Below are positions 1 through 57,731 of a stretch of DNA of 64,000 bases, piece by piece. The translations under genes were made by a program, and so were the position numbers. Under the pieces are notes generated by a model, which saw only the letters and a program-made list of their open reading frames with translations, ran no database searches and had not been told where the DNA came from. This DNA comes from Bugula neritina (taxonomy: Eukaryota > Animalia > Bryozoa), in assembly GCA_964035545.1 (NCBI GenBank), contig OZ037767.1, positions 19,050,628 through 19,114,627 on the forward strand, read 5' to 3'. Every line of letters begins with the position of its first letter. Position 1 is the first letter of the stretch.

Positions 1-201
1 AAAAAGTCAGTTCATCAGCACAAAACAAACCTATTCCCATTGTTTTTTCTCTTGAGTAGGCCTATAATAAAACTCATGTCAAGTCTATTTAGGTTTCAAG
101 AGATAAAATTAAATATTTGTGAGCTTCCATTAAGGTTTTATATATGTGTTGATTTTCTGATAGTAAAGCATTGCAGCTGCAGCAGCTGCTTTTTAACTGA
201 C

Positions 202-3200: not shown

Positions 3201-6200
3201 CAGCCTAGCTGTAATAATAATTAACATTTAATCTTTAATTGGCATTTCAGCATTTCCTTAAAACATTTTTTATCAAGCAGTTTTTTTATACATAATAGAG
3301 CAGTGATGGTGGCACATTTTCTTGTTTGTTGCCTGTTTAATGCAATTTCAAACTTTTGGAAGTGGTTTAAAAATTCACCTCGCCAAACAATGTTTAATAA
3401 TTGCAAACCCGCATCAGTCTTGTGTAAAAATTAAATTATAATGCTGTAAAAACAATTTCTATGGCATAAAATAATGAAGCAGAATTATAATATGCTCAAG
3501 TCCAATCAGTTACAAGAACAGTACACAATGTATACTTTATAGAAACATGAGCTCAGCTACCACCATAACTGAGATAGGCTAGGGGCCTTGGCCATTTATC
3601 TACTAATTAAGAAAAACAAGAATTTGGTAAGAAGAGTGCTTTATTCATTAATTTTAAAATTAATTATGCATTTCTTACTTTGTGTTTCGTTCCTGCTCCA
3701 ACAGCTCTTGAAATTCCTGCAAACAGTTTTTCATTTTCCTGTGGGTTTCTTCATAGTAGTACTTATACCAGTACAGGTACAGCCGCCACCTGTAATATTA
3801 GCACATGTATCTATTAGTGTCTCTACAATCACCAACTGTAATAGTAGCACTTTCATTAATACTGCTATAGTCACTGACTGTATTAGTGGCACAGGTACTG
3901 TAGTGCCATTATAGCTTATTGTGCCATCTGCATATTGTGCAACATTTTACATTGCAAAACTCAATTTGATAAAAAGGACAGCAGGTTGCATAATTGTTGC
4001 ACGCTATTGTAGTTTAAGCTTTATTCCAGCAACCTAACACAGCAAGCCATTCTTATGTTTTTTTACTATCACTATACTTAGTTTCTTGTTACAATAAAGC
4101 AAACACAAGTGTTCCCTTCATACTAACAAACTGCAACTGAAATCTTTACATCTATGTGTTTACAGAACTCTAAAAACAACTTACATATATCAACACTTCA
4201 ACAATAGCTACTTTGGTTTAAAGTCTGCTAACTGAGACAAATAGACATACATAACTTGTACCAGAAGCTAGAAATTTGAGTTTATTTGCGGTTTAATCAA
4301 TTTATATTCTCATACAAACATTAAATGACTTCTAATATGACCGTTAAATGTATCATCTTTCAAGTAACTTTTCGAAGTGCTTTTATCTATCAAAGAATGT
4401 ATGTCAACTGCATCTTTGCAAGGTTTAAATTAATGCTCTACACTTTTAGATTGAGAGGTTGCCTTCTATTATCTACATAAATGTTTTATATCTTTCTAGG
4501 CTGTTTTAAATGTTAAAATTGTTTGCATATATTGTAATGAAACTAATAATATATGTTGCAGTTTGTTATTAAAAAAAATTAGTAAGTCTATATAGTCATT
4601 ATCCCTGTAGAAAACCCCTGATAGAAAAGGTTTTTTAAATCTGGCTAAGGAATTATTTATATGTGGTTCTGGAGAAATTATTGCTGGATGTTCTTGCTAA
4701 CATTAACATAATTACCGAGCCAGTGCTCTAACCTCTAACCTCTAACCTCTAACCTCTAACTTTTAGACCATAGCTGCTACTTGTTGCAGTTTAATGATGA
4801 AAGTTAGGAAATATTTTTATTAAAACAATGTGAAAATTATTCATACTATGATAAATTACGCAGTCACATGACCTACCTCTCTTCTACTGACAAGTCATGG
4901 GCAATATCAACAATATTAGAATTACAATCTTCCTCTAGTAATATTACTTTATCTTCGGTCATAGCCTCTTTGTTCAGTATATGCATTATTGAGCTTTCAG
5001 TTTCGAGCAAAACAGTGGTGTCTGTAACATTTGTTTATATCATTTATGAAAAAACGATTTTAAGAACATATAAGAAACTAAAATGAATTATAAAAAATGA
5101 ACAGTCAGTTGAAAGCTGAATGCGTCTTTAACAACACATTGCCTAATGTCTTGTGTAATAATATATAAACTTTTATACCATTCTATTTAGCTGCACAAGT
5201 AAAATAAAAAAAAAAGAAACGAAGGCTAAACTGGAGCAAGAAATGGACAAAGCACTGAGAGACCTTAACAACTTTGAAGAGCTATATGTGGAAACACAGT
5301 GGAAAAGTCTCAAAAAGTTAGTTTACAAAACAGCAGAAAAAGTATGTGAAAAGCAGCTAATCGTAAACATCAAGACTGGTTTGATGAAACAGATGAACAG
5401 CTAGCGATTCTACTAGAACAACGGAACAGTGCACAAAATAATATGCTAAAAACAAACACACGATCAAACAAAAACAAATATACAGCAGCAAAGAACGAGG
5501 TGCAGAAATACACGAGGAAGTTGAAATCAGACTGGTGGGAGGCAAAGGCTGAAAGTTTACAACAGGCAGCAGATATCAATGATATGAAATCATTTTATGG
5601 AGGACTACGGGAAGTATACGGACTAGATAGAAATACAGTACTGCAGGAGAAGTCAGAAATCCTCAACAGATTTGCTGACCATTCTGCTCAACTCCTGAAT
5701 ATACCTGGTACTCTGGATGTAAGGGCTGCAATGGATATTGAAACAAGACCGGAGGTACACTGTCTCTCTGAGCCCCCAGAAGTAAGGGAAGTGATAGATG
5801 CAATTGACTATATAAGATAAGGTAAAGCACCTGAGAAGTGTGGAATTCCATCAGAAATATGGAAACATGGAGGAACAGAAATTTTGTCTAAACTGCACCA
5901 GCTGATCTTTTTCTGTTTGGAAGGAGGAAAAGGTACCTCAAGACTGGAAAGATGCTAGCATCATCCCGATATTCAAGAAAGGCAGCTGAAGAGATTATGG
6001 AAACTACAGAGGAATATCCTTGCTCTCTATTGCTGGAAAGATACTCTCACAAATTCTGCTGAACAGGATCAACATGCATGTTGCTCCAGTTGTGCTACCA
6101 GAATCTCAATGTGGCTTCAGGAGTGGTAGAGGTACCATGGACATGATCTTCTGTTTGAGACAAACACAGGAAAAATGTATAAAGCAAAACATGCCAATTT

Positions 6201-9200
6201 ATGCTGTTTTCATTGACTTCATTAAGGCCTTTGACACTGTATCAAGAGATGGCCTCTGGCAAGTTCTCATTAAGTGTGGATGCCCTGCCAAATTTGTGAA
6301 CATTGTCAAATCTCTACCTAGTGGTATGCAAGCTCTTCTGTGGCATATGGAAATGATCATTCTAAAGAGTTTGCAGTGACAAACGGTGTTAAACAAGGGT
6401 GTGTTCTTGCACCTACCCTCTTTTCTCTCTATCTGTCAGTCATGCTAGAGGTTGCGTTTAAGGACTGCTCAAATGGAGTATCTATCCAAACAAGACAAAA
6501 TGCAGACCTCTTTAATATAGCTCATTTTAAAGCAAACACAAAAACATCTCAGAAGATCGTAAAAGAAATGCTATTTGCTGACGACAGTGCTCTGGTAGCT
6601 CATGATGCGCAGAGTATACAGCGGCTAGTAGATAGATTCTCTTTGGCTGCTAAACAGTTCAGCTTAAAGATAAATATAAAAAAGACAGAGTGCCTATACC
6701 AACCAGTTAAAAACCAACATGTAGTGCAGCCTCCTGGTGATATTATAATATATAATGAAGCTCTAGTGCAAACAAAAAAATTTCATATATATCTTGGCAG
6801 CACAATATCTGATGATGCCAGGCTGGACGGCGAACTGATCTCCAGGACGGGAAAAGCTATAGTGCAGCCTATGGGAAGCTGAGAGAGAGACTGTGGGACA
6901 ACCACCATGTGTCCCTTCAAGTAAAATGCCAAGCATACAAAGCGATAGTTTTATCCACCTTGCTGTATGGGGCCGAAACATGAACAGTTTATAGAACACA
7001 GGTCAAGAAGCTAAATTTATATATGACGAGGCATTTGAGAGAAATTATGAAGCTAACTTGGAAAGATAAAGTTTCAAATCACGAAATATATAAAAGAAGT
7101 GGTTTAGCTCCAATGGCAGATATGCTCATTGAGCCTAATCTGAGATGGACTGGTCACATTCACAGAATGGATAAAGAGAGACTAACCTAGGCAGCTGTTC
7201 TACTCACAACTGAGTTCAGGGAAAAGGAATTAGGGCCGTCCTCGTCTCAGATTTAAAGATGTAGTGAAAAGAAACTTAAACTGGAGAGGAATTAGACAAG
7301 ATACTTGGCAGGCTGCAGCTAACCGTGGACCTATATCTGGAAAGCTATGATTTATAGACCTAAACCTAGAACAGTCATCGTCGACTCGACGCTAGCTGCA
7401 TGTTTTAAATAAAGGTACACTTTGTCTTTCTAGTAAAAACATGATGAAAAAAGTTGGCAATCTTGAAATAACATTGTTTCCCTTTTTTACAGTACTGTAT
7501 ATTCATTTGCTATAGTCTTCAAAGAAAAGATAAAACTTTACAATCAAAATTTTAAAATCAAAGTTTACACTGCAGCTTTAAGCAGAATAAAATAGCTATA
7601 CATTAAGGTTATGTGATTCATCACTATAGAACAGAAATAATTTTTATGATATAGACCAACATAATATATAGACTACGTTTTACAGGACAGAAAAATATTT
7701 TTTATAGCAGTTTCTTATACTTAAGTTCTAAAATCCTTAAAATTGTGAAGTTAAGGCATCAGCATAGAATGATGATGCCTTAACTTATGATAATATGATA
7801 ATTAAAAACATTCCATGCACATTTTTTCAGGTATAAAGTGTACAAAGACTGTTGACAATAATTGACATCAAAAGGAAGAAATTGTTACACATGTGCATGA
7901 GATGAAAATAGAAAATGTGGGAATGCATCCAATACCTTTGTCAAAGTCCTCATCATTCAACCCATCAATGAGTCTACTCTCTTCTTCCTCACCAATATCA
8001 TCATCTTCAAATAATGAGTCTAAAAGATTTTGAGCAAACAGTAACAATGAAAAGATTAATATAGTAATAATATAACAGCGGTGCTGATCAATGAGTAAAT
8101 CATATTAATAAATATAATACACGTCAACGATTGTTCACATAAATATAAAAATAAAATAAAATAGTTAAAAGGGATTAACAGAAAGTAATTTCTTAAGGCA
8201 AAAATCAATTTATTTTTAGCACTCTATGACAAGCATTCAAATAAAATTTACAATTATAACATGTCTTGCAAAATTTTCAATTAAGTTTAGTAATTTATTT
8301 TTTCTCTATCTGACTTCACTTGTAGTTTTCCAAACCAACTTTTCTTGCTTCTACGTAAAATTGTAGTAATAATTTTACTTTGCTCTGTAAAATATTACAA
8401 ATTCAACTTAATTTATTTTGTTTTACCAGCAGCAGAATTGGATTGGGAAAAGTTAAAAAGAGTATGCTTATTCTGAAAATTTCTTAGTCTGCTCTTTCCC
8501 TCTTCTTTATCTAAAATCATAATTTTGTCTTTCAATCTAAGTAAAATACTTCCTACTGCAATAAAATGCAATTAATATTTTTTTTTAAATTTTCGCTTTT
8601 TAGAGCTTTGCTTTGCTTTAAATTTAAGTTTACTTTTACATAAACTTTGAACTAGTTATTTTGTTAAAAAAATATTGTAAATTGTCAGCTAGTATCAACA
8701 TTTGTAAACTAGCAGCTTATATGGTTAAATTTAAATTGAATTAAATTGTTTAATGTTATGTAGCCAAACCATTCTATTTTTATATTTGCCTGCCTGTTTG
8801 TAACCAATTCTGAATTTTTTGTTCTTCAAAAAGATTCATGTTATCTTTAAACAGATCTCTTAGCTGACGAGCAAATACAAACTGTTCTGGGGGAATCAGA
8901 ACAGCCACTTCAGTCATTAACTCATGTTTTTGCATCTTTTCACATCTTACAGCCAGCTCTTCATATCTTGCCTAGAATTACAGGGTTTTATGACAAATTT
9001 GATTTAATGCCAATGTGTGAGCTTGTTGCAGATTTAAAATTTGAAAAGTAACTGTCAATCAACAGAAATAAACAGCTTGCTCAGTAAATTACCATTATGT
9101 TGCAACAAAATATTGGGTTTAGCATTAAAATATATTATTATATGTAGATGAAGTGCTTATATAATTTATTGTTGAAGTTATCTGCTCTTTGTTTATATAC

Positions 9201-9336
9201 CCTTATGCAAACTACTGCCCGCTAATAAATGAAATTCAATTTTATTCTTTATTTGACTTTGTTGTTTTTTATTTATCTAACTTTTTACCTGGCAGCAGAA
9301 AAGTTCTAGAAATTAGACAGCCCACCTAATAAAACA

Positions 9337-9430
<94 letters not shown>

Positions 9431-12400
9431 GCAGTCTAAGTAGTTTAATGCCATTAAGTTTTTTTTTACATGATAAAAGCTGTCATACCTGAATGCTTTT
9501 TTTCTGCGAGTAAATTCTGCCAATTTCAGACTTCCAAAACTCTTTGCCAGTCAAGTGTGGCCTTTTTGAGGGAAGATTACATTTCTTTAGCTTTTCACTT
9601 TTACTTCTCGAGCCAACTCGCACAACATCTAAACACATATTAACTCTTTTTACGGTTAAAGACATTCATTTAAGTTCTCTAAATATGCAAATGTCCAGAT
9701 TTTACTGTAAAAAGTAATCGGATACTGAAGACATGCGTTAATTTACTTTTTGATCAAAATCGCTGCTAAATTAACATACCGGATGATTCACAAAACACAA
9801 GAATTCCTTCCAAGAACTGATCCAATGCATGGTTGGTGTAGCATACAATTAATAATGGCCTGTTCATTCTGTTAGGCAGTTCGTTGACAAAGTAGTGAAA
9901 TGGGTCGTCCGATTTAGTAGCAGTCATACTGCGTCTGAGTGAGAGTTTGAATGATGAACTAAATAAGTTTTCAATAAGCGTCTCCACAATCCGCAAACCA
10001 ACATAAGTCTTACCAGTGCCTGGAGGACCTGCAAATAAAATATTTATTAAAACAAGCTTTTTTCAATGCATTACCATCAACCACATACAAAATTGACGGA
10101 AATCGCTAAATGCAGCCCAAAGTTTAGAGTCACTGAGTGCAGTATTTGTAGTCACATCACTGTTCAAACTCCAAATCTAAACTCGATATAGTAGATGCAC
10201 CCATTCACACAAACCACTCTGCTCAATGACCCCATACAGGGTGCTGCATCAGCGATTTTCAAAATTTGCAAGCTTGATAAATCATCTGAGACCAATTTAT
10301 TGTGATAATTATATTGATAAGTATGTGAAGGTTTAGGTGTCAATATTAAGAATCTCAATATTATATTATATAGTTATGAAAATAATATAAATAAAAAAAG
10401 GTTATATTTAATTTTACTGTGAAAGTGTTGGCCTAGTATATTACTCTAATTATACTGCATATAATATTAAAATTACCTGAATACTTTTTAGAATGTACTA
10501 AAACTAAGGAATAATGTGTCAGATGTGAACTAAACACCGCGTGACAACATGCTGTATAATGAAAAGTACTAATTTATGCCCAAGAATTTTTTGAACAACC
10601 ATTTATTTTTATCAATTACTTTCTGTCAGGCTTAAAACATTTTGATAGTTAAAACTATGGAAAGTGGAATTTTAAAAGAGTAGGTACTTTGCAGAAATTT
10701 TTCTTGCCTAAAATTATCAGCAGCAGCTAGTCAACACAGCAATATTACGTGTGAGCACAAAGTAGTGTTATGTGCAGATCACACAAATAATTTTCAATAT
10801 ATGAAATAAAATAATATGATATCAATTAAGCTACGAAATCCAAGTTGCATTGCTGTCACTATTGCCTCATTACTAACACAATAAAATTAAACTGACAAAT
10901 AATTTCACTGACATAATTATATTCAAACAAATCTAGCAATAAAATATGATTAAATTTGTTAACATGAAAATTCAGATTAATTAATATAATAATTAAAGTT
11001 CTAATTGATATTCTCTTATTTTGTAATATTAAATAATATTTGTCCCAGTAGTTTTTCTGAAAAATTATATCCAATATATTGATAGATAAAGTTTCTTATG
11101 GTACAAATCTTTCTAAACTATAGCTGTGTTTGATCTGAGGAAACACCGTATACCTTGTATCACAACAAACTCTTTGGTGAGAGCAGTTTTGTACGCCTCA
11201 TACTTTGAATGGTTAAATTCCATTTCCTCTGCTGGTGGCCAATCCTCAAAGTCTTGTAGAGGTACCGGAGATGTGAGACTATTTCCTGTGGGAAGTTCAT
11301 AAGTAACTCCTGGCTCCAAATACATTGGTGAAACTATGTCTGTAGAACATCTAGAAAATCATGCTTTCCTTTAGAAATAGAACTCAACTAAAAGTTTTTT
11401 ACGAAATTTTTTTTCAAAAGTTGTTCAATATGCTTCAATACATTTAGAGCAAAATATTTTGTGCTAATCATGTGAAATCAATGGAGACATTGTATTAGTA
11501 TGCTTAACAGTTGCAGTTGGGTTCAGCAGAATGTAAAACATATGAAATTATTGGGCGAAAATTCAAAATCTAAAATATAAAATAAAAATCTTCAAATTAG
11601 ATGTTTTGGAATTTTGACTAATAATCCTTATACTCTGCGGCTTTAAAATCTATTTAGACCTAAATAATTTCAGTAAAAATGCTCCACAATAATGTAAATA
11701 CAAGTAAGTATAAAATCAGACCTGACAAAATATTTTTGGAATGGTAGTGGGTTGAATGAAGTGAACTGTTGTAACCCTCTAAGGACATGCTGGTAGGCTT
11801 CGTAATAGCTTGCACTTTCTATTACTGTGAAGGGACCTCGTTTGTTCTGTGAGGAATCATAGTGAATTTGGGACTTGGGGAGAAACTTTATTTTTATTGT
11901 TCTACCATTATACCATGGTGTGTTTTTATCTTCTCTTTGGGACACTGTGGCAAATAGGGTGGATTCTGGTAAAAATCTGTCAGTTGAGAGGCAAATCAAG
12001 GAGCCATAGATCAGTTTTTTTGACTTTACCCATATCGAGTTTCTGAAAGCTGGCTGGTGGACAGGCAACCTTGTGAGAAAAAGTAACATTCATTAGTAGT
12101 CATTTTTCCGGTTGAAATAATTTTAGAAAGGAAACTTTAATTATACCAAGGACTGCCTTCATTTTAGATTTTTATACTTAGACTCAACCAAGTTAAAACT
12201 TATGTAACTTAAAAACATTTTCGCAAATATTACAAGAATTAGCCAACTCAACTAGCTAACATGTTTTGTGCACAATTAAGCTTGGTCATTGTAATTCTAC
12301 AAAATGTATATATGTAAAACAACAAAAAAGTTTTGATTTAGTTTAACTTGAATAATGAAATGAAAACCTTAACTGCAGGTTAGTGAGCTTGTTTTACAGA

Positions 12401-15342
12401 ATCTATAACCATGCAAGGCTGGCAAGAATATTACTATCTCATTGCAAATTAGCTAAAATAAAAAGCTACCATTTAAATTATAGACTAGAATTAATTATAA
12501 TTTCAACCCATGTTAAAAATATAGAGACCTCACAATGCAGAGTTTCCCCTTTCTAGTAAGCTCCTCGTGAGTGATTTCAAACTCAGTGTACACTTTGCAG
12601 TTGTCATGGTGGAGCTTTCTTCTACCACCAATATGGGAATTCTTTCTCAAATTGCGAACTCCTTCTCGAATAGTGGAAATGAAATCTTCACGAAGAAGTC
12701 GGAATTGAGTGTCGAGGTAGTCATCTGCATCCTCATATCCTGTTTAATTATTATATGGCAAAAACATCTGATTTGGTAACTATATATGTATACATTATAG
12801 CATGTAACACTCAATTTACCTCTTATAATATATGTATAGTGCTTTAATTGTGGACTTATGTTAGTTGAATATTTCAAAATTTTTCACAATTGAATATTTT
12901 TTTTTGAACTATTAAGCTACCTTGAAAATAAAATTTAAAAAAGAGACTTATCTACATAGAAAAAGGCGCTTAATTCTCCTACTTCTGGCAGGCTTTAGTA
13001 AAGATACTGAAATTATAAAGTGTGCATATAATTTATTCACTCCCTCACATACCTCCAGAAACTTTGTTTCTCCTTAGGCTGACTTTAAATGCGGGGTCTA
13101 TGTCTTTAAGCATAGGTTCAACTGACATACTTCTGAAGTCATCCAAGGGTCGCTTCTCTACACAAACTCTTCCCTTCCTGGCCACATACTCATAGTTCTT
13201 TGCTCTGTATAGAAGCAATAATTATTATTGCGTTCCAGTATCAATGTTGCAATATATATAAAATACATAATTTTTTTTAATTTTGGTTTATTCTTTAAAC
13301 TTAACAGCAAACATGGTAATTATTTTAGAATTTAATTTTACTACTTTTAATTGAAAGCAATCTAAGCAATTAGGTTTAATTTTTTAGCAAGTTGATTTGC
13401 ACGCCAGTATTGTCAATACTATAATAAGCTCTGTGTGACGTTGTTTACATTAGTCATTGCCAGTAAGTCACAACAAATCACAACATGTTTCAGCATGTCA
13501 CAACATGTTACATCATGTCACAGCATGTCACAGTAAGTCACACTGAGTCAAAACATGTCACAGTATATCACAATATGTCACACCAAGTCAAAACATGTCA
13601 CAGTATGTCACAACAAGTCACACTGAGTCACACTGAGTCATAGTGTCACAGACACTTCTAACACAGAGCACCTATCTAATTATATATATGCCTATGTCGT
13701 TAACAAAGTTATTATGCATGTGCCACATGCACTTGTTAGCAGCTTATATCTTAGCACACACTTTAACCGCTGCGAGGTAGTCAAAAAAATTTTCATGCTA
13801 TAAACCTCTTTATACTCACTGCCCACTTTCCTCAAGCTCCTGTTTATAGCATTGATCAGCTAGCTGAATGACGCTGTCATACTCAGCCAGAATACTGGCA
13901 TAGGAGTCAAAGTTTGAAGGAAACGTTCCTTTAAGTATTTTTAAACAAGGCGCTAAGACTTTTCGACTTAAAGGATCAATTCGCAGCAAACTGTTGTAAA
14001 CTTGAAGAAACAAGTGTAGCGATTTTATCAACTTTTTTGGAGGCTCTGCTTGAGACACTAAAATTTCATTCTCCAGTCTTTGCTTACAAATCTGCATTTA
14101 AAAAAATAGTAATATTTTAATAATGAAAACCAAAAACATACCGTTCATAAACACTTTTCTGCTGCAAAAAGAACATTGCAGAATATTTTAATATTGTCCT
14201 ACAGTGTGTTCTGTAGCTGCAACTAACAGCAATGCAAGAAATGCTGAGCTCACTAAAACTGTTATTAGGCGGGTCCAAATGAAACTTGCATTTAGAAAAG
14301 AGAAAGCTAATTGACAGCTATTATACTCAAGACCCTACAATCCAATCAATCTTACCTTTATGGGGGGGGGGGGGCTTGAGCAGTTTTGATGTTACATACA
14401 GTACAGTATGAAAATCTCTTGCAATAACTTTATGACAAGGCAGAAAAGACCCTATATTTAATATTGGTGTTTCAATTTGCATTTATATAGACTGCTTCAA
14501 GTTGGGTTTCTTAATACTCTAAAACCAGCAAATAAGACAATTCCTCATATTTAAAAGTTTTAACTTTTTTCGTTATATGTCATTTTAGCAGAACCTTAAG
14601 TTAATAAAATGTGTATTATATGTTTTTAGCTGTAATAACATCAGCAACTATACCCACCTCTGTGAGAAATTGAGGTTTGTTAAACAGTAGCTCAGTCTTC
14701 AGATTATTTTTATAAGATATCATTATGTCATCAACCTCTAGTGATGTTGCAATTGCCTGTAGTTCAAGGTCGATCCAGTCATGACCCTTCTCACTGTCAG
14801 TGAGCAAATCTAGGAAAGGTTCCTCGCAGCATTTTATGATCGCCTTTACTGGATCTGCTGCGGCAATTTCTTTCAGTCTGAAAAATTGAACGACTTCTGT
14901 TTAATGTGAATCAAACTAGAAGCTTTCTCATAGAAGTAAGCATAAAAATTTATTTTATGATTATATTGAAAATGTTTTGATTGGTTTAGAGACTAAGGTA
15001 ATCAGCCATGAGTTATAAACTATATTAGGGTTAGCAGCTAATAGAAAATAAAACCAATCAATGTATATATATAATGGGGAGAACTACCATTGGCTAGCCA
15101 TAAAAGTAGTAATAATTTCTAATGATGTTTAAAAATAAACATCAGTGAGTTATTGAAGTTTTAATTTTATTTGTACCAAAGAATTGAAAGATGAAAATAT
15201 ATTGATACTGCAGTTTAGCTAGATTAAATTAAACCCAACACATAAATTTCATACTAACTCATTAAACTCAATTGGCCTGCTTCTGTAATATTTTCTGCAA
15301 GATTCTGAACTGCCGGGCTCTTCATTGTCTTCATCAGACTCC
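202..15342 (-). CDS. ZNFX1: ZNFX1-like SF1 (Upf1-like) RNA helicase, paralog A; multi-exon, 3' end beyond left edge, extreme 5' end unresolved
   Basis: Phase-consistent exons in minus-strand order: 15259-15342, 14658-14877, 13820-14091, 13053-13204, 12529-12739, 11722-12069, 11154-11350, 9780-10028, 9489-9628, 8794-8971, 8427-8510, 7936-8019, 4877-5021, 3679-3789, 2665-2855, 1499-1717, 1039-1150, 202-350. Motifs: [44 protein letters not shown] (Walker A), [69 protein letters not shown]. No stop or frameshift found. Confidence 0.93.
2410..2687. repeat. ~31-bp minisatellite derived from a ZNFX1 exon/intron junction
   Basis: Repeated unit ACTAACCAATGAGAATGAGGTGTTACAATAA. The last copy is the real exon end (HLILIG) plus its GTTAGT donor. 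Confidence 0.8.
5196..7392 (+). mobile_element. Degenerate 5'-truncated RTE-clade LINE inside a ZNFX1 intron (antisense to host)
   Basis: RT fragments [62 protein letters not shown], with several frameshifts and stops. Flanking direct repeat TAGCTGCA at 5188-5195 and 7393-7400 (probable TSD). Confidence 0.9.
9341..9429. repeat. (AT)n microsatellite
   Basis: Pure AT dinucleotide run. Confidence 0.98.
13466..13650. repeat. 10-bp tandem repeat (GTCACAACAT-like) in a ZNFX1 intron
   Basis: GTCACA core recurs every 10 bp. Confidence 0.9.
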
Positions 15343-17284: not shown

Positions 17285-17727
17285 TGACTTGGAAATTTGT
17301 AAGCAGCAAATATAACACCACACAAAGCACCTGCTCACACAATATCAGCGAATAAATCAATAAAGAAAGAAATGAATTGGAACGCATGAACATTCCAAGA
17401 GCTAGATGTGTCTTCATTATTGTTCAGTGATTTAAACAAAACAAGCTCTATGACACAAGTATAATAAACTAGAGTTAATGTATCTTCCTAACTAACATGC
17501 AGTGCAGCTTTATAGGTGACAACTAGCCACTAACTTCTCGAGTTCATATTGAAATTATTAAAGGGAGTTGTCCCTCCTGGGCAAATAGCTTCACTCAAGC
17601 ACAGTTTGCCTGTGTGTATTGTTGACTTATAACTAACTTATGAACTTTCACTCAGCAACAATTCCATTAAACACTGTTCAAAATTGCTTTATATAGACCA
17701 AAAAATGATAACTGGTTCTATAACACC

Positions 17728-17817
17728 GCGCACGCACGCACGCACACACACGCACACACACACGCACATGCATGCACGCACGCACGCACGCACACACACG
17801 CACACACGCACACACAC
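17728..17817. repeat. (CA)/(CACG) microsatellite
   Basis: Visible directly. Confidence 0.95.
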
Positions 17818-18403
17818 TGCAGATATTTTTTTCTTTTTTTTATTTTTTCGAGAGAACAATAAAAAATTTCACGTTTGTATGAATGGTTGAAGCAGTATTT
17901 CCTCTAACCATTTGATCAAAATGAGCTATCAGCTAATAAAAACAAGTTAAACTTCATTTTATACTAGAATAGTGTCAACCCAATTGATACAAAGCATTAA
18001 TATTAGGTAAGAAAAGCAAATTTCTAAAACAGGGGAGATAATTCCGGCTTTGACTATTGGAGTTTAAGGCTTTAAAAAAGATTATGTTGGTCAGAATGAA
18101 CTAGGAAATGGTGTGACTTATAAGGGCACTATAATAGTGTCTACATACTAGAAATTAACATTCTAGATGCTATACAATTACAAAAGATGGCTGATTCTAG
18201 GTATAGGTACATCTGAAAAAACAATGCATCCTGCTATAGGCTCTGCCTACCTATTAATTTCTAAATAGCATTTTTTATCAGAGAAAGTTTCATAGGTTTA
18301 TAAAATTTCTACTAAATATTTTGAATATTGAATTTAAGTTACTCAAATATACATATTTAGGATTTCATGATGCCACCTTGAAAATTGCCTAACTCCTGCT
18401 TAC

Positions 18404-18478: not shown

Positions 18479-20544
18479 CTTAGCAGTGATTTATAGTAAA
18501 AATAGATTAGTTTTGAGGTGCTCCACCAGCCCATTTTTGCATATTAATGTTTTACAATAAATTTAGTGCATTATACATGCCTTGAATCAATTCCAGATGA
18601 TATGGCATATTATTGGACTCAGTGTCAGCAGTATTTTAGAGCTGATACTAATAATTGTTAACTTTGAAATAGATTCACATATTTATAGCAGGGTAGTTTT
18701 AATTGTTTTATCACTTAGCAGCATGTATAGCTCGTGTTCTAAAGAATTCAGGCAAAGTTTGTGGCTATTCTAAAAGCTGCAGCTGCAAAGTCTAGCATAC
18801 ATAAAGTCAGCAACTTAAATATGATATCCTGTCAACTATTGAGACAGTAATATCATATTTCATAACTGCTGGCAAAGAAAAGTTGACAACTCCTGATTAT
18901 GTTGTGACTAGTAGGAGTTCTAAACGAAGATTTAGTTAACGGTCACTTTTTTATCAAAAAATGTTTCTGCTTTAAAGCTAATTCTAAACTGTTTTGTTTG
19001 CTACAAGTTTGCCTAAAACCAGCTCAGTTCTAAATAAGAGCAAAATCAAAATTTTTGTAGTGTAAAACTACAGGGAAAAACATCTCAAGTATACTAGTAA
19101 TAATGTTGGAACAAAATGAAGTTTAAAGTTGCCAAAGATTGAATTTCTTAGTTCAAACTGACACTAAATAGCATTTAGTGTAATAATATAGTCATGCGCT
19201 TAATTAAAGGATTGCTCAATCTTAGTTTATTACAATCACATTATAATTATGAACTATAATCTAATATGTATGCAAACAATTGTGGCTTTGCAAAGGGATA
19301 TGTGCCTAGAAAACAGCTTTTCAAAATTCCAATTTTGAGGGAGGTAAAATTTTCAGCCATGAAAAAGAATAGCCTAATACGTGACGTGTGAACGCCGGTA
19401 ACTATGCTGCACGTGCTAACTATAACGCTAGTATTCAAGGTTGCTGGGCGCAACATCAACCAATAACGCTCAAGCAGTTACAGTGCGCTATATAGGTCAG
19501 CTTTGGTGTGCCCGTAATATTGCACAATCTGACCTAGTTTAGATCGATCGCAGGCATTCATCCTAAAGAACGCATGTTTTTGCAAGGCTTTTTCTAATGT
19601 TTACAAGCAAAATATAGCCTAATGTTATTACATACATGTTATTTAAAATGTCAAAAAACTATAGATTAAGAGAATTCACATTTGCACTTCTATAAATATA
19701 CAAATTACGAGCTGAAAGATCACATCTCACAGTCATATTTCTATAGTTATTCATTTGTATAGTCACGTGACCAGCAGGAATGCTGGCGCTGTTACGTCAC
19801 AGTTCCCAGCTCATTTCAAAATCGGCGTTTTGGCTGTTACCAATCTACACCCTCAACTTCAACTAACTTTTTCTACCTTCGGTCAAATGCTTTTTGTCAA
19901 TGCATGCTTAGAAAAACACAATATTATGTGTGTTTGACCTAAATGGCCATTTATTAGACAAGATAGAGCAATCCTTTAAAGCCTAAACTTGTAAACAAAT
20001 GTATAGCATAATAACTTAGTATAAATAAATGTATAGTACTTATTTGCTGTTTATTGTATGTTGCTGAATTTTCAAAAGGTTAAAAATATTAAACCCTTTT
20101 AGAGCCTAGTTGCATCAAGAGCTACCACTTCACACTTTTTCAGTTTTTAGTCATATAAAAATTATTGGAAAAAATGTTTACAATAATATTTAGTAAAAAG
20201 CTTTTTTCTTGCAAAATACGTCTAAATTTATTTGTTAGATATCTTTCAATGAAACCTTTGCAGCATGCATTTCATGTTCAAGAAAACCATGCTGACTAAA
20301 CTTAATCTAAAAATTAACTATTGGGTTACTGGCTTAAAATTTTATCAAAATAGTTATGTAAAATTAGCAAACAAGATAATATACAATGAATTAAACAATT
20401 GAGAAAATGGTTTGAAACATTTAATTTTTTGAATATTAATTTACTAACAACATACATAGAACGACTATATTGCATATACTTTTGGCAAAGCATCTGTTAA
20501 GTAATAGACAAAACAAAAAAACAGTTGGTTCAGCATTAACAGAT

Positions 20545-22057
20545 CTACACGGAAAGAGAATCTCTTTCACTTCTGTCTTCGTGGTTGGCTGTAGAAGCAA
20601 CATTATCTTTGTGACTGTCCGGAAAGAATTTGTAGAGCTTTCCTTTGCAAACGGCAATGGAAGACGCTATGCCAGGTCGCAGTATGTCTAGCTAAAAAAT
20701 ATTGTCTGTATAGATGTATAAGCAATGCCATGCCATGCAAGTTATTTATTAAACTACGGGTAAATTAAAGTTTGTAATACATAAACTATATTTTATAAAA
20801 CTCCAAAAAAATTTTTATGCAATTTTTGAACTTACATAAATTTTTGATTTAGTAGTTTGATACGCCAGCAAATATACATAATCCAAATATTTATAGACAC
20901 TTTTCTAACTTGCTAGAAAAATATTTCACTGTTGGGTACTATTTCACTACATAGATTAGCTCAGTGTAATATCTCTCTTAAGGTGTTGCATGCCTGACAC
21001 TATATTATATCCTTTTAAATCACTGCTGTAATTGTTTCAGCAACATAAAATTCTAACCTGAATTCTGCTCAGAACAGATTTAGACTTACCCAGCCTGGAT
21101 AGGTTTTCAGACGAGGCTGTAAATTTAGAACTCTTAGAAGAACTTTCTTCAGCTCTGTGATCCTGCTTAGATCACCATATAGTGCACTTTCTATCAGTAC
21201 TTCTTTGAAGAAGGACATTATCTAAAATATGATATAGTGCTAATCTATAAGATCCTTTACTTTGCAAATGAGCATAATATATCTATGACATTCAAATGCT
21301 GATGGAAAAGCATGCTTATGATATTATTACAGTTTTTATGAGATTATTACAGTGAATGATTGAAATCAATCTCTTTACGAGGTTAATACAGTAGACGACT
21401 TAAATCAATCTACAGCTAATCACATTTACAACAGAGCTACACTTACGCAGACTGTATACACAATTCCTATGTTAGGCACGCCTTTTACATCCCTCAATGC
21501 ACGCCAAACGTAAGGATTGTATAACATGTACATTTGCAAGCTTATTTCCGACATATTGTAACTGTCATGCTCAGCTTTGTCACCTTGAAGCTCTAGTTTG
21601 TAATGTGCAAAGTTGACTAAAATAACAAAGATGTAAAAATCTAATGCAAGCAAGTCTACTATAATTATGTGAACATATCATAGCATTAAAGTTGTCTGCC
21701 CTTGTATACTTCATGCTCGGAAAGTGAATTTGCAAAGTTTACACATATTGCATTATTTCTTGTAGAAAAATAGATTAAATAAGTTCATTTGCACCTTTGT
21801 TCTTTATTGAATTTACAATCTTCATCAATGTATAAATCAATCTTTTAGTGGAAAAAATATTGAAATAATGCAAAATTACTACTTCTTTTAAAAGCATTCA
21901 AATCCGAAAAGTTAATTATTACAATTTTGAAATGTTGAACAATTTTCCTTTTAACACAGCCAATATTCATCAATAATAATACAAAGTGTCTGGAAGGAAG
22001 GCAAAGTTTGCCAACCAGTACAGTACCCTCTTGAGCCAAGTGTAATGAACTGAGGCT

Positions 22058-22090
<33 letters not shown>

Positions 22091-22867
22091 CATCTGTCAA
22101 AATTGCCAGAAAATATAATTAGCTACCTATATTATCAATTGCAGTGGCATAAACCTCAAAAGCTTCATTAGTATTTTTTCCAAGAAGTTCTAAAACTTGT
22201 TTTGTTCTCTCAGGCTGTACATTAGCATTTGCCAGTTCCTCTTCTATACTGAATTGAATATTTAGAAATTTAAGAACTATTTATGCAATAGTATAAGTAT
22301 CATATAGGTGGGACTAGGCAATGGTCTAAAAAGTTTAGCTATTTGCAGCATCAATAAAAAACTTATCTGGGTTTTGTTCTAATCCGCATAAAAACTTGCA
22401 GCTAGATTACATATTCTGCCTACTTTTCAGAAAGTTATCTATATGTACCACACTGAAATGATGACACATCCACATTTAAGCAGCCAATTATTAAATCTAG
22501 GCATATTTTGAGCTACTTGGTATTAAATTAATAAGATATATAGCAATGAATCTATAATATATTATAATAAATGTTTATTTAAAGCATGTAACATGTTTCA
22601 AGTTGCTTTAACCTTAATTTCTACTTACACAAACATATACAAGTTACCATCACCATGGTCAAAAGTAAAAATAGTGATATATAATGTTGAAAAAAAATCA
22701 GACTACTGCAATATGATGCTATTACCAATGTGTGACTCAAAAGTATGTTATTAAAATATGACTATCTTGTGGTGTAAATGTGACTCATACAATTCAACTC
22801 AGACTTACCGGTGACGAAAATATACTCCAATAATCTCTTCGTTGGTAGGAATCGAGATAGTCGGCAT
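20545..22867 (-). CDS. Divergent Bcl-2-family protein A (209 aa, 5 coding exons)
   Basis: Exons 22809-22867, 22127-22248, 21447-21616, 21090-21221, 20545-20691, all GT-AG, 630 nt in frame. Protein: MPTISIPTNEEIIGVYFRHRIEEELANANVQPERTKQVLELLGKNTNEAFEVYATAIDNIVNFAHYKLELQGDKAEHDSYNMSEISLQMYMLYNPYVWRALRDVKGVPNIGIVYTVCIMSFFKEVLIESALYGDLSRITELKKVLLRVLNLQPRLKTYPGW|LDILRPGIASSIAVCKGKLYKFFPDSHKDNVASTANHEDRSERDSLSV. Correspondences: BH4-like NEEIIGVYFRHRI (Bcl-2 NREIVMKYIHYKL); BH3-like KQVLELLG (Bcl-xL KQALREAG); MSFFKEVLIES (FSFGGALCVES); BH2-like LNLQPRLKTYPGW (LNDHLEPWIQENGGW) with a phase-0 intron right after the Trp. Confidence 0.78.
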
Positions 22868-32245: not shown

Positions 32246-32537
32246 CTGCCCGCTGGAAAAAGAACTCAAGTAATTGGATGATGGCAGAAAGAACTGGTTA
32301 ATAGAGTTGATTGTCACTGTCACATATAAAAACTATTGCTATTGCTGTGTATCTGAATAAAATAATAAATACTACCATTATCTTCAAATTAATGTGCAAA
32401 ACTGTGTAAACTCTGCACTGTAGTCTTGTGTGCTTCATGTTATTTTTAAACGTAACTAAGTGGGTTTTAGTTCTACAGTTTTACAAAAACTCATGACTTT
32501 ACTATCACCATCTTGTGTAGCTTATATTAATATTGTG

Positions 32538-35443
32538 CCTTTTACATCCCTCAATGCACGCCAAACGTAAGGATTGTATAACATGTACATTTGCAAGTTT
32601 ATCTCCGACATATTGTAACTGTCATGCTCAGCTGTGTCACCTTGAAGCTCTAGTTTGTAATGGGCAAAATTTACTAAAATAACAAAGATGTATAAATGTA
32701 ATGCAAGCAAGTTTATAACTATGTGAATATATCATAGCGTTAGAGTCATCCATCCTTGCATAATTTGTGCTTGGAATGAAATTTGCAAAATTTACAGATA
32801 TTGCATTATTTCTTATAGAAAAATAAAATAAATAAGTTTCCTTGTACTTTTCTTCTTTATTGAATTCAAGTAAAACTCAGGTAAACAAATAATTTTGTGA
32901 GGAACAAAAATAGATCGATGTAAAGTAAAATTGCAGAAATCAATGATTACAATTCTGAAAAAATTGTCTGTTATAACTCAGTCAATGTTCATCAACCATA
33001 ATGCAAAGTGTCTAGAAGGAAGGCAAAATTTGCCAAACCAGTACAGTACCCTCTTGAGCTAAAAGTAATAAACTGAGGCTTAACATACATCAGTCTGTCA
33101 GAGTTCCCGGAACATATTATATTACCTATATTATTAATTGCAGTTGTGTAAATATCAAAAGCTTCATCCATATTTCCCCAAGGAAGTTCTAAAACCTCTT
33201 TCTTACTCTCAAGCTGTAGATTGACATTGACCATTTTCTCTTCCATACTAAAAGAAACATTCAGAAAATTATTTATAAATTGATTCATTGCATCTCACAA
33301 ACATGACAACACCTTGCAAAATTCAGTGTAAATACCGGCTATAACATAAGTAGGTATGAATAAAAATGAGAGAAAAAGTCAAAACTCTGTTGGCTTATTT
33401 AAAATAAAAACTCATTTAAGGTATTTGCAAGATGTCACGAAAAGCTATTTCTGCCCCATGCCCCTCTATATTTGATGGTTTGATTTCTTGCAGAAGAACA
33501 TTGACTCAGAAAGTTATTGATGAAATAGTCATTGTCTGCTATACATTTGATGGCAAGTTCTTTGTTAAGTTTCTGAATGTGCAAATTAATGTTTAGATAC
33601 TCAATACCAAGTTTTAAGCAATCTTTGAAAATCTTTCGGATAGCCTTTTTATCACTGACATAGATACAAATAAACATAATTGGTAGACAATAGGCAATGC
33701 GGGACATGATGAAATTTTTGAATTACATATTTGCTAGAGGTTAAGAGCTAAGATACACAAAATTCTTCACAATATACATTCTTCTTGATACTTTTGTAAC
33801 TACTGATTGTACATATTTATGAAATCTCAAACTCTGATCCACTAACACACCAAGGTATCTCACTTTTTCAGACAGTACAATGTTGGTTCCATTCAATACG
33901 GGAGTAGGGGTATGAGGTTTAGCACGTTGGGTTGAGAACATCATTTCTTGAGTCTTGCTAGGGTCTAATAATAGATTTAAATCATCACATTGCTTAGAAA
34001 TTATTTTAATATTGTCAAGGTAAATATTTAGATCAGACTGTTTGCCATTAATGCAGCCAACAATGCAAGCGTCATTTGCAGATTTAATTACAGTTATGTT
34101 GCTCTGGCTTGAGTTAATCCTACTAATGTAGATAGAAAACAATAGTGGAGATGAGCAGCACACTTGGAGAGTTACTGTGTTAGTTATGACTGAATTTGAT
34201 GTTATACCATCCACTATTGTGCACTGTACTCTGTAAGAAAGCTGTAAATCCACTCAGTAACATTGTAGTCAAGATGAGTTAGTTGTGTAATGAGGTCTGG
34301 AATAGATATAGTGTTGAAAGCAGAAGAGAAGTCTATAAAGAGGTACCTTGCATAATTGGATGTTTTCTTGTCAATAAAACTTGTCACAGTAGTAGTTAGA
34401 CATAACAGCGCATCTTGTGTAGAGCGATTTGTATGATCTGTGAACTGATATTTATCTATAGGTGTATGAGTTGTAATGTAGTGTTTGATAAGCCTTTCCA
34501 ACATTTTGCATATGCAGCTTGTGAGAGCAATTGGGCAATATTGTTTAAGTAGTTCAGGATTTTTGACTTTAGGAAGTGGCTTGATCATTGCAGATTTCCA
34601 TGAATTTGGAGTTGTCTTAGATTTGATAGAGAAAGTAAACAGTTTTGTAAAAACATGTGCTAGAACTTGATAGCAGCAGATTTTCAAAACTATTGGAATG
34701 AGACCATCAGGACCTGCACTTTTTCAAAAGTTTAGTCCCTTTAGATGTTTGAGAACAGCATCTTTTGATATTTCCAATTGAAGTGCACTGTTAATGTTTT
34801 TATCGGAAACAGGCTGATGAGAACAATTTATGAGATATAGTATAGGTAGTATAAGTTGGACTTATAGGCAATGGCTTAAAAGCTTAGCTATTTACAGTAT
34901 CAATTTTATTAAAAACTTATATGGGTCTTGCTCTATAATCCACCTAAAAACCTGCAGCTGGATTACATTTTATCTACTTTTCAGAAAGTTAACTATATAA
35001 TGTACCATGCACTAAATTGATGACACACCCACATTTAAATTATAGTCAATTAAATCTAGGTATATTTTGAGCTACTTGTTATCAAATTAAAACGATGGCA
35101 ATGAATCTATAGCTTATAAAAGCTTTTAATTAAAGCATTTAACATGTTTCAATAAATTGCTTTAGCCTTAATTTCAAATAACTAAAAGTTACCATCACCA
35201 TGGCCAAAAGTAGAAATAGCGATATATACTATGTTGAAAAAAGCAGACTAGGTACCGCAAAATACGCAAAATACGATGCTGTATGGCTATGACTAATGCA
35301 TGACTCAACAGTGTGTTATTAGAATATGACTAATATATTATTATTACTCACATGTGACTCATACAATTCAACTCAGACTCCCTGGTGACAAAAATATACT
35401 CTGATAATCTTTTCGTTGATAGGAATTGGGATATAATTGCCAC
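32538..35443 (-). pseudogene. Truncated duplicate of Bcl-2-like gene A
   Basis: Exon 1 remnant (~35384-35443) has ATG>GTG, a 1-nt insertion and a dead donor (GTAAGT>GGGAGT). Exon 2 (33126-33247) is open. Exon 3 (32538-32673) is cut by the duplication breakpoint. Exons 4-5 absent. LINE in intron 1. Confidence 0.88.
33270..34818 (-). mobile_element. Degenerate non-LTR retrotransposon (Rex1/Babar-L2-like RT)
   Basis: WKSAMIKPLPK, PIALTSCICKMLE, RSTQDAL, FIDFSSAFNTI, SKTQEM, VRYLGVLVD; frameshifted; absent from unit 1. Boundaries approximate. Confidence 0.85.
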
Positions 35444-35562
35444 CTCTGCTTATCAAAAATGTTTGATCGTTGAAACAAAAATTTATAACTATTCTATTAA
35501 AAAGTTTTTAATTAGGTATGTAAAATTATTCAAATATTTATTAAATGTTTTGATTGTAACAC

Positions 35563-49104: not shown

Positions 49105-49314
49105 GCGTGTGACGTGTGTGTGACGTGTGTGTGACGTGTGTGTGACGTGTGTGTGACGTGTGTGTGACGTGTGTGTGTGTGCGTGTGTGTGTGACGTGTG
49201 TGTGACGTGTGTGTGACGTGTGTGTGTGACGTGTGTGTGACGTGTGTGTGTGTGTGTGTGCGTGTGTGTGACGTGTGTGTGACGTGTGTGTGACGCGCGT
49301 GTGTGATGTGTGTG

Positions 49315-49347
<33 letters not shown>

Positions 49348-49439
49348 ACGTGTGTGTGTGACGTGTGTGTGACGTGTGTGTGTGACGTGTGTGCGTGTGT
49401 GTGCGTGTGTGTGCGCGTGTGTGCGCGTGTGTGCGCGTG

Positions 49440-49532
<93 letters not shown>

Positions 49533-49579
49533 TGGGTGTGTGTGTGTGTGTGTGGAGTGTGACGTGTGTGTGTGGAGTG

Positions 49580-49633
<54 letters not shown>

Positions 49634-49697
49634 TGTGTGATGTGTGTGTGTGTGTGTGGCGTGTGTGTATGGTGTGTGTGTGTGACATGTGTGTGTG
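49105..49697. repeat. Compound (GT)n / GTGAC microsatellite
   Basis: Visible directly; source of several spurious ORFs. Confidence 0.98.
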
Positions 49698-52600: not shown

Positions 52601-52989
52601 AAACCTACCTTAAACCATTTTAAGGCACTAGTACGAATTTCCAGTGCATCATGTTTGCGATAAACACATTGGTTATCTAAAGATATAAAAAATTACATAG
52701 ATCATTCAAACGCTGCTTACTATGCATTACTTAAAAATAGATTAATATGTAATTGAGAAATAGTTAATTAATGCTTTTCATCTTACGAAAATTACACAAC
52801 ATTATGTTCTCTTCTCTCACCTTTAAACTTCCATGGTATCAAACTTTTAGCTCTTTGGCCACCAACAAGGCTTGTGTTTGTCAACACCCCAGCATGCAAC
52901 TAGACATAATATTAGCTCTTCAATATTTTTATTCAAAGTTCATTTTCTTCTACAAAAGACGATGTCTAATTCTGAAATATAATGTTTAG

Positions 52990-57285: not shown

Positions 57286-57642
57286 TTAGCCTGCCATACA
57301 ATCCCAATCTACACAATACACTGGTACTATATTGTCAGGCATGATTAAACTTGTAACAAAAGCTAGACTAGTATCTTTTATAATAAAATCAATAAATCCA
57401 TTTTATTGTTCAATCAGGTTTCACTATAGGTGCTAAATCACTTTGACTATGGAGCTCACATTTACTAGCAGCGATTTCATATGAAGTCTGTCTGTTAAGA
57501 AGAAATTAATCTTGCTGCATATATTATGAAACAGTTCTGGAAATAAAGAATGTCAAAGAGAAAACTTAACAGGTAAGTTTGATGGCAATGAAAAAAGATA
57601 TGATTGTAGCCTAGTAGTAATAAGGTTAATCAATTTAATAGG

Positions 57643-57645
<3 letters not shown>

Positions 57646-57731
<86 letters not shown>
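57646..57731. repeat. (AT)n microsatellite
   Basis: Pure AT run. Confidence 0.98.

What the first reader, a model, noticed from the sequence alone, without database searches (positions are those of the whole stretch)
20545..22867. Hidden, highly divergent Bcl-2-family gene lacking NWGR, the BH3 Asp and an obvious TM anchor
Seen: a clean 5-exon, 209-aa ORF with BH4-, BH3-, BH1/alpha5- and BH2-like segments in the correct order. Established: a phase-0 intron immediately after the BH2 Trp (GGW|) is a conserved feature of Bcl-2 family genes; here it falls at PGW|. NWGR is replaced by NIGI, LxxxGD by LELLGK, and the C-terminus is a polar tail. Inference: a soluble Bcl-2 fold probably not binding BH3 peptides canonically, conceptually like the poxviral Bcl-2-fold immune modulators (A46, A52, B14, K7), but here an intron-containing host gene.
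Basis: partly seen in the sequence, partly recalled or inferred. Interest (0 to 1): 0.8.

Follow-up and report, generated by a model that had tools for sequence, protein, structure and literature searches.

The report
Divergent Bcl-2-like gene in a bryozoan
A real, conserved five-exon gene in what looks like a bugulid bryozoan genome encodes a small helical protein with the intron hallmark and motif order of the Bcl-2 cell-death family. Membership is likely but unproven, because the spliced protein could not be searched or folded here.

Summary
The 209-aa, five-exon model on the minus strand (22867 to 20545) is exactly as described. All four introns are GT..AG, and exons are 33-45% G+C against 28-29% in introns. 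Exons 3-5, their splice sites and the stop codon are conserved in Bugula neritina contigs, with dN/dS 0.18 (p = 2e-8). So it is a real gene under selection, in an AT-rich bryozoan-type genome, not human.

The Bcl-2 reading is plausible but unproven. A phase-0 intron directly after the TGG of PGW matches the family's near-universal BH2-splitting intron. Exon-by-exon Pfam and PDB searches found no Bcl-2 match. A search of 1.84 billion proteins with exon 3, word searches with exons 3 and 4, and metagenome and viral scans found only the B. neritina fragments. The joined protein has no reference, so it was neither searched nor folded.

One correction: a canonical LxxxGD (LELQGD) lies in exon 3, 41 residues before NIGI, so the BH3 Asp is probably not missing. 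Host proteins Bfk/BCL2L15 and Bid are closer analogues than poxviral proteins. Verdict: probably a new, very divergent Bcl-2-family member.

The parts
22809..22867 (-). Exon 1. ATG at 22867-22865, 19 codons plus 2 bases, donor GT at 22808-22807. It encodes MPTISIPTNEEIIGVYFRH; the BH4-like amphipathic stretch NEEIIGVYFRH starts at 22843.
   Evidence: an in-frame TGA four codons upstream of the ATG closes the frame
22127..22248 (-). Exon 2 (phase 2 in, phase 1 out), 40 full codons.
   Evidence: the pseudogene copy keeps this exon at 52% aa identity
21447..21616 (-). Exon 3, 56 full codons. It carries LELQGD and the degenerate BH1-like LRDVKGVPNIGIVYTVC.
   Evidence: 93% aa identity to Bugula neritina contigs
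21579..21596 (-). LELQGD, a canonical L-x-x-x-G-D (model residues 68-73), 41 residues before the N of NIGI. This is my candidate for the true BH3 core.
   Evidence: invariant in the window gene, the B. neritina copy and the pseudogene copy
21462..21473 (-). NIGI in the place of NWGR (NIGL in B. neritina). Asn and Gly are kept; Trp and the ligand-binding Arg are lost.
   Evidence: role of the Arg and Asn from PMC12396273
21090..21221 (-). Exon 4, 44 codons. It ends in LQPRLKTYPGW (21090-21122). Folded alone it is predicted as helix 2-15, a turn at YGD, then helix 18-39.
   Evidence: 91% aa identity to B. neritina
20692..21089 (-). Intron 4 (398 nt), phase 0, starting directly after the TGG of PGW. 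This is the position of the family's BH2-splitting intron.
   Evidence: conserved in L001 (GGCTGG|GT); literature
20545..20691 (-). Exon 5, 48 codons plus TAG. A weakly hydrophobic stretch GIASSIAVCKGKLYKFF (20623-20673) is followed by a 25-residue polar tail. There is no membrane anchor.
   Evidence: a B. neritina allele (L002) has a 32-bp deletion in the tail
20420..20425 (-). ATTAAA polyadenylation-like hexamer, 119 nt after the stop.
   Evidence: consensus match only
32537..35561 (-). Truncated pseudogene copy of the 5' half of the gene, about 75% DNA identity, with homology of the upstream flank continuing to at least 37000. The ATG is lost, the exon-1 donor is lost, a transposon with reverse-transcriptase ORFs (33741-34687) sits in intron 1, and homology ends inside exon 3.

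Best explanation
[quoted passage not shown] The Trp and the ligand-binding Arg of NWGR are gone, and the C-terminus is polar rather than a tail anchor. I therefore infer a soluble protein that does not receive BH3 ligands through the canonical Asp-Arg contact. It would work more like Bfk/BCL2L15 or Bid: a latent, globular carrier of its own BH3 helix, or a non-apoptotic Bcl-2-fold adaptor.

Shown: the gene model, purifying selection, the motif strings, the intron position, and the absence of an anchor. Inferred: homology to Bcl-2, the fold, and the mode of action.
For: Gene reality: canonical splice sites, and an exon/intron G+C contrast of 33-45% against 28-29%. Exons 3-5, their splice sites and the stop are conserved in Bugula neritina contigs, with dN/dS 0.18 and p = 1.7e-8.

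Family hallmark: the phase-0 intron lies directly after the TGG of ...YPGW. [quoted passage not shown] Multi-exon Bax/Bak/Bok-type genes keep that boundary (PMC8998228).

Motifs in the family order, all invariant between the two species: LELQGD, then N-x-G 41 residues later, then G-W exactly 52 residues after that N. A composition-based estimate for this ordered combination plus the intron position is about 2e-8 per protein. It is post hoc, so treat it as an order of magnitude only.

Exon 4 alone is predicted as helix-turn-helix at pLDDT 76. Bcl-xL chains (4cin_B, 3r85_C, 2yq6_A) are the one recognisable family among the listed matches that aligns over the whole model: 45 columns, 22% identity, TMq 0.64. 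The E-value is only about 5.

From memory, as a lead and not a test: the N-to-W distance of 52 equals that of Bcl-xL, Bcl-2 and Bax. The positions L68/N109/W161 are nearly collinear with Bax L63/N106/W158.
Against: No exon gives any Bcl-2 hit in Pfam at E <= 10. No exon or exon profile hits any of the many Bcl-2-family chains in PDB sequences at E <= 10. The Foldseek matches are not significant, and the exon-3 model is unreliable (pLDDT 61, with strands predicted). Two defining residues of BH1 (W, R) and the tail anchor are absent. The spliced protein was never scored against the family profile nor folded. The motif argument was built after seeing the sequence. Only two closely related species carry the gene, so conservation cannot single out the motif residues.
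Confidence: 0.6

Rival explanations
1. A lineage-restricted orphan gene for a small helical protein unrelated to Bcl-2. The BH-like strings and the intron after Trp are coincidence.
For: A scan of 1.84 billion representative proteins with exon 3 found only the B. neritina fragment. Its other hits are repeat artefacts. Word searches with exons 3 and 4 found only B. neritina fragments. Metagenome and viral scans found nothing. No Pfam or PDB sequence signal per exon. W and R of NWGR are absent.
Against: The ordered combination of LxxxGD, NxG, GW at the family's spacing and a phase-0 intron right after that Trp is improbable by composition, about 2e-8. The central segment is the most hydrophobic part, as in the Bcl-2 fold. 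Exon-wise searches with 40-56 residues have little power for a family whose divergent members routinely escape sequence searches.
Confidence: 0.27
2. One reading: a Bcl-2 fold without a functional BH3 (Asp missing) that acts like the poxviral Bcl-2-fold immune modulators (A46, A52, B14, K7).
For: LELLGK in exon 2 does lack the Asp. There is no anchor, and the groove Arg is lost. The gene lies 5.6 kb upstream of a ZNFX1-like gene on the same strand.
Against: A canonical LELQGD exists in exon 3, at a more plausible distance from BH1. No similarity to any viral protein or viral contig was found. Cellular analogues (Bfk, Bid) explain the same features without invoking immune modulation. Adjacency to ZNFX1 is not evidence of linkage.
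Confidence: 0.07
3. Not an independent functional gene: a decaying pseudogene, a chance ORF chain, or 5' exons of the downstream ZNFX1-like gene.
For: A truncated pseudogene copy exists 10 kb away. No spliced protein or transcript-derived sequence was found in any collection.
Against: dN/dS is 0.18 with p = 1.7e-8. Splice sites and the stop codon are conserved between species. The first recognisable ZNFX1-like exon lies at 14885-14649, 5.6 kb beyond the conserved stop.
Confidence: 0.05

Closest known systems
Bfk / BCL2L15 (and Bid)
   Same: A cellular, intron-containing gene for a soluble protein of about 160-200 aa. It has a BH3 and a BH2 but no NWGR and no C-terminal membrane helix, and a mainly aliphatic central helix alpha5. 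Bfk has the Bcl-2 fold yet does not bind a BH3 peptide (PMC8814693).
   Different: The bryozoan protein keeps the Asn and Gly of BH1 and a BH4-like first helix. No sequence similarity to Bfk or Bid was detected per exon against PDB sequences, which I expect to include the deposited Bfk and Bid structures. Caspase activation of the Bfk/Bid kind is not indicated by anything tested.
Bax / Bak / Bok-type multi-exon Bcl-2 genes
   Same: Four to six exons with the boundary after the BH2 Trp retained (PMC8998228). From memory, the positions of the BH3 Leu, BH1 Asn and BH2 Trp (68/109/161) are nearly collinear with Bax (63/106/158), and the overall length is similar.
   Different: No tail anchor, and W and R of NWGR are lost. 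By my recollection the other intron positions do not match those of BAX. No profile match.
Trichoplax Bcl-2L4 and other members with a crippled BH1
   Same: Accepted family members can lack conserved BH1 residues. Bcl-2L4 has SWRR instead of NWGR and is thought unlikely to have a functional groove (PMC8998228).
   Different: Those proteins are still recognised by family profiles and keep a membrane anchor.
Poxviral Bcl-2-fold proteins (A46, A52, B14, K7, N1)
   Different: They are viral, intronless and without BH strings. Here the BH-like strings and the BH2 intron are the main evidence, and no viral relative was found.

Membership tests
Bcl-2 family (multi-motif, Bcl-2 fold) | BH2-splitting phase-0 intron directly after the TGG (Trp) codon of G-G-W | tested here: met
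   TGG|GTAAGT at 21092-21090 then 21089, phase 0, in the context YPGW. Conserved in B. neritina L001. The feature is defined in PMC7527217 and PMC8998228. Caveat: calling this Trp 'the BH2 Trp' is itself part of the hypothesis.
Bcl-2 family (multi-motif, Bcl-2 fold) | Significant match to the family profile (Pfam Bcl-2, PF00452) | tested here: inconclusive
   Exons 2-5 were scanned separately at E <= 10 with no Bcl-2 hit. Pieces of 40-56 aa have low power. The joined protein has no reference and was not scanned.
Bcl-2 family (multi-motif, Bcl-2 fold) | Sequence similarity to a solved Bcl-2-family chain | tested here: not met
   phmmer or hmmsearch of exons 2, 3, 4 and 5, with profiles for exons 3-5, against 177,635 PDB sequences at E <= 10 found no Bcl-2-family chain.
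Bcl-2 family (multi-motif, Bcl-2 fold) | Helical bundle with two central hydrophobic helices (the Bcl-2 fold) | not testable with these tools
   This needs the spliced protein, which has no reference. Partial only: exon 4 alone folds as helix-turn-helix at pLDDT 76. Foldseek lists Bcl-xL chains over the full length but at E about 5. The exon-3 model is unreliable.
Bcl-2 family (multi-motif, Bcl-2 fold) | BH1 signature NWGR | tested here: not met
   NIGI in the window gene and NIGL in B. neritina. N and G are kept; W and the ligand-binding R are lost.
Bcl-2 family (multi-motif, Bcl-2 fold) | BH3 core L-x-x-x-G-D upstream of BH1, in the order BH4-BH3-BH1-BH2 | tested here: met
   LELQGD at 21579-21596, 41 residues before NIGI and invariant in all copies. 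The order follows PMC8998228. The string is short: about a 5% chance somewhere in such a protein.
Bcl-2 family (multi-motif, Bcl-2 fold) | C-terminal hydrophobic tail anchor (common, not universal) | tested here: not met
   The best 19-residue hydropathy in exon 5 is 0.81. A 25-residue polar tail follows, and it is variable within B. neritina.
Bfk/BCL2L15-Bid type (soluble Bcl-2 fold, BH3 without NWGR) | BH3 and BH2 present, NWGR absent, no membrane helix | tested here: met
   Direct reading, against the description in PMC8814693. This is a resemblance in architecture only.
Bfk/BCL2L15-Bid type (soluble Bcl-2 fold, BH3 without NWGR) | Sequence or orthology relationship to Bfk or Bid | tested here: not met
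   No PDB sequence hit per exon. Full length was not tested.
Poxviral Bcl-2-like immune modulators (A46/A52/B14/K7) | Viral gene or detectable relation to viral proteins | tested here: not met
   The gene has four spliceosomal-type introns. BFVD Foldseek and two IMG/VR scans found nothing.

The most novel reading that the evidence does not exclude
A bryozoan-specific, soluble, Bax-collinear Bcl-2-fold protein that keeps an intact BH3 but has lost the groove Arg/Trp and the tail anchor. That would be an invertebrate counterpart of the Bid/Bfk 'latent BH3 carrier' solution that arose independently from a multi-motif ancestor. It sits next to an expanded ZNFX1 antiviral-helicase locus, which might link it to infection-triggered cell death.
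Probability: 0.12. Interest if true: 0.6.

Novelty: new member of a known kind. Interest (0 to 1): 0.38.

Why it matters
The Bcl-2 repertoire of Bryozoa does not appear to have been described, judging from the few papers I read. Family surveys rely on profile hits and annotated proteins, so a member this divergent and apparently unannotated would be missed. If the fold is confirmed, it adds a lophotrochozoan example of a soluble Bcl-2-fold protein with a disabled groove and a retained BH3. That bears on how Bid/Bfk-like proteins arise from multi-motif ancestors. It would also show that the BH2-splitting intron can flag family members when sequence searches fail. If the fold is not confirmed, it is an ordinary lineage-restricted orphan gene.

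Tried and rejected
1. Exon-by-exon Pfam scans and PDB sequence searches, with single exons and with two- or three-sequence profiles. Only chance hits came back: phosphatase, transaminase, prenyl synthase.

2. Word search with exon 3, then the full HMMER scan of 1.84 billion representatives with exon 3. The only true relative is P0001. P0002-P0008 looked significant (down to E = 4e-11) but are collagen-repeat, tail-fibre-like proteins in which a short LWRxxRxVxGxPxxG motif is repeated several times, so I rejected them as summed short matches.

3. Word search with exon 4. It found only P0037, on two JGI contigs of the same species as L001.

4. Metagenome scans with exons 3 and 4 (one search was a size slip) and viral-contig scans. 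Nothing found.

5. AlphaFold of single exons and Foldseek against PDB and BFVD. No significant match, and the exon-3 model is unreliable.

6. Species identification through the gag-protease ORF. The best hit is only 49% identical. Rfam and tRNA scans of the window were empty.

8. The joined spliced protein was never searched, aligned or folded.

Full report
WHAT IS THERE. The window is AT-rich (28-38% G+C in 2-kb bins) and eukaryotic, with short GT..AG introns, retrotransposon ORFs and microsatellites. There are five exons: 22867-22809, 22248-22127, 21616-21447, 21221-21090, and 20691-20548 followed by TAG. Intron phases are 2, 1, 0 and 0, and the product is 209 aa. An in-frame TGA four codons upstream closes the frame before the ATG. 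All donors are GT (three of them GTAAGT), and all acceptors are AG behind T-rich tracts. Exons are 33-45% G+C and introns 28-29%. An ATTAAA lies 119 nt after the stop.

IS IT HUMAN? I do not take this contig for human. Its composition does not fit, and its transposon gag-protease ORF has no relative above 49% identity among 5.8 billion protein clusters. The only relatives of the gene come from bryozoan samples.

IS IT A REAL GENE? A word search with exon 3 found one protein fragment, P0001, on Logan contig L001 from run SRR4020080. A word search with exon 4 found P0037 on two JGI metagenome contigs, L002 and L003. The three contigs are 97.5-100% identical to one another. The JGI contig names carry the prefix AY690838, which is the GenBank accession of the Bugula neritina mitochondrial genome. 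B. neritina Illumina reads from a 2016 symbiont project are mentioned in the draft-genome paper. So the relatives are host DNA in B. neritina holobiont data. I infer that the window comes from a related bryozoan; the species is not determined.

L001 carries exons 3, 4 and 5 with the same acceptors, donors and stop codon. Amino-acid identity is 93%, 91% and 81% respectively. Across the three exons pN is 0.062 and pS 0.293, giving dN/dS 0.18, with Fisher p = 1.7e-8. The gene is therefore under purifying selection. The extreme polar tail is the least constrained part, and one B. neritina allele (L002) has a 32-bp deletion there.

NEIGHBOURHOOD. A ZNFX1-like helicase gene (Pfam ZNFX1 and AAA_12) runs on the same strand from about 14885 down to the start of the window. 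A second ZNFX1-like gene starts near 59561 on the plus strand. The first recognisable ZNFX1-like exon is 5.6 kb beyond the conserved stop codon, so the candidate is a separate unit.

At 32537-35561 there is a copy of the promoter region and exons 1-3 at about 75% DNA identity. Its ATG and its exon-1 donor are lost. A transposon with reverse-transcriptase ORFs sits in its intron 1, and homology ends inside exon 3. It is a pseudogene.

TESTS OF THE BCL-2 READING. The joined 209-aa protein has no reference, so I did not search, align or fold it. This is the main limit of the report.

- Pfam at E <= 10 gave no Bcl-2 hit for exons 2-5.
- PDB sequence searches at E <= 10 gave no Bcl-2-family chain, using single exons or small profiles of the window and B. 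neritina sequences.
- The HMMER scan of 1.84 billion representatives with exon 3 returned P0001 and seven long repeat proteins. Those seven carry collagen repeats and a short motif, LWRxxRxVxGxPxxG, repeated several times. Their scores are sums of short matches, so I reject them.
- Metagenome scans and viral-contig scans found nothing.
- AlphaFold on exon 4 alone gives helix 2-15, a turn at YGD and helix 18-39, at pLDDT 76.
- Foldseek of that fragment against the PDB has no significant match. Among the helical-hairpin noise, three Bcl-xL chains align over all 45 columns (22% identity, TMq 0.64) at E about 5. This is a hint, not evidence.
- BFVD gave nothing. The exon-3 fragment folded poorly (pLDDT 61, with strands) and its matches are meaningless.

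WHAT STILL SPEAKS FOR BCL-2. The literature states that almost all bcl-2 homologues of animals share one intron, located directly after the TGG codon of the BH2 tryptophan (PMC7527217). It also states that multi-exon Bax/Bak/Bok-type genes keep that boundary (PMC8998228). Here intron 4 is phase 0 and starts directly after the TGG of ...LQPRLKTYPGW, and this is conserved in B. neritina.

Upstream in the same protein, 52 residues before that Trp, lies N-I-G-I at the start of the most hydrophobic segment (VPNIGIVYTVC, then IMSFFKEVLIE across the exon junction). Another 41 residues upstream lies LELQGD. From composition alone, this ordered set plus the intron position has a probability of about 2e-8 per protein. 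The estimate is post hoc and rough.

From memory, and so a lead only: the Asn-to-Trp distance of 52 is the same in Bcl-xL, Bcl-2 and Bax. L68/N109/W161 is nearly collinear with Bax L63/N106/W158. Several local strings around these anchors also resemble Bax and Bcl-xL.

Exon 3 holds a canonical L-x-x-x-G-D. It is invariant in all copies and lies at a distance from the BH1-like site that fits the family better than the exon-2 string, which lies 70 residues before it. The BH3 Asp is therefore probably present.

What is really lost is the Trp and the Arg of NWGR. That Arg makes the conserved salt bridge to the ligand's BH3 Asp and is essential for ligand binding (PMC12396273). The tail anchor is also lost: the best 19-residue hydropathy in exon 5 is 0.81, and a polar tail follows.

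The nearest known solution is not poxviral but cellular. Human Bfk/BCL2L15 has the Bcl-2 fold with BH3 and BH2, no NWGR and no membrane helix. It does not bind a BH3 peptide and resembles Bid (PMC8814693). Family members with a crippled BH1 are also known, for example Trichoplax Bcl-2L4.

MECHANISM I COMMIT TO (confidence about 0.6 for family membership, lower for the mode of action). The product is a soluble Bcl-2-fold protein whose groove cannot make the canonical Arg-Asp contact. It acts either as a latent carrier of its own BH3 helix, like Bid and Bfk, or as a non-apoptotic adaptor. The main rival, at about 0.27, is an unrelated lineage-restricted helical orphan. The pseudogene, chance-ORF and fusion readings are made unlikely by selection and by the conserved stop.

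NOVELTY. If confirmed, this is a new and very divergent member of a known family, in a phylum whose Bcl-2 repertoire does not appear to have been described. No spliced protein containing exon 3 or exon 4 was found in the collections searched. Two annotated B. neritina assemblies exist, but I cannot tell whether those annotations are in the collections, so 'hidden' is plausible and not proven.

Noticed in passing
window 32537-35561 (minus strand; upstream homology continues to at least 37000): A truncated pseudogene copy of the promoter region and exons 1-3 of the candidate, about 75% DNA identity. Exon 3 is 93% identical in protein but exon 2 only 52%. The ATG and the exon-1 donor are lost, a transposon sits in intron 1, and homology breaks inside exon 3.
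   Followed up: partly
window 89-14885 (minus strand) and 59561-64000 (plus strand): Two ZNFX1-like helicase genes (Pfam ZNFX1 and AAA_12 domains) with 54-69% identical exons. One lies 5.6 kb downstream of the candidate on the same strand.
   Followed up: partly
window 21462-21518 (exon 3) against P0002-P0008: The stretch NPYVWRALRDVKGVPNIG gives apparently significant phmmer E-values (to 4e-11) against long collagen-repeat, tail-fibre-like proteins. They repeat a similar 18-residue motif several times, so this is an artefact of summed short matches, not homology.
   Followed up: yes
L002:896-1040 against L001:1129-1275: Within Bugula neritina samples, one allele has a 32-bp deletion that replaces the last 13 residues of the polar tail. 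The extreme C-terminus therefore seems dispensable.
   Followed up: partly
window 54886-56259 (minus strand): An intact 457-aa gag-protease ORF of an LTR-type retroelement (zinc knuckles, aspartyl protease). Its best database relative is only 49% identical, which shows how poorly this lineage is sampled.
   Followed up: partly
window 5443-6882 (plus strand) and 33741-34687 (minus strand): Reverse-transcriptase ORFs of non-LTR-type elements. The second one interrupts intron 1 of the pseudogene copy.
   Followed up: no
window 17680-17890, 22040-22090, 49000-49765, 52986-53279, 57600-57700: Long microsatellites (CA/TG-rich, TATACA, GTT-type and TA-rich) that produce spurious long ORFs in the mechanical ORF list. 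One of them, (TATACA)n, sits in intron 2 of the candidate.
   Followed up: no
window 20692-21089 and 20548-20691 against L001: Divergence from B. neritina is uneven. Introns 2 and 3 and exons 3-4 are 90-95% identical in DNA, but intron 4 is 74% and exon 5 is 79% (pS 0.51). This may reflect a past conversion event or different histories of the two halves.
   Followed up: no
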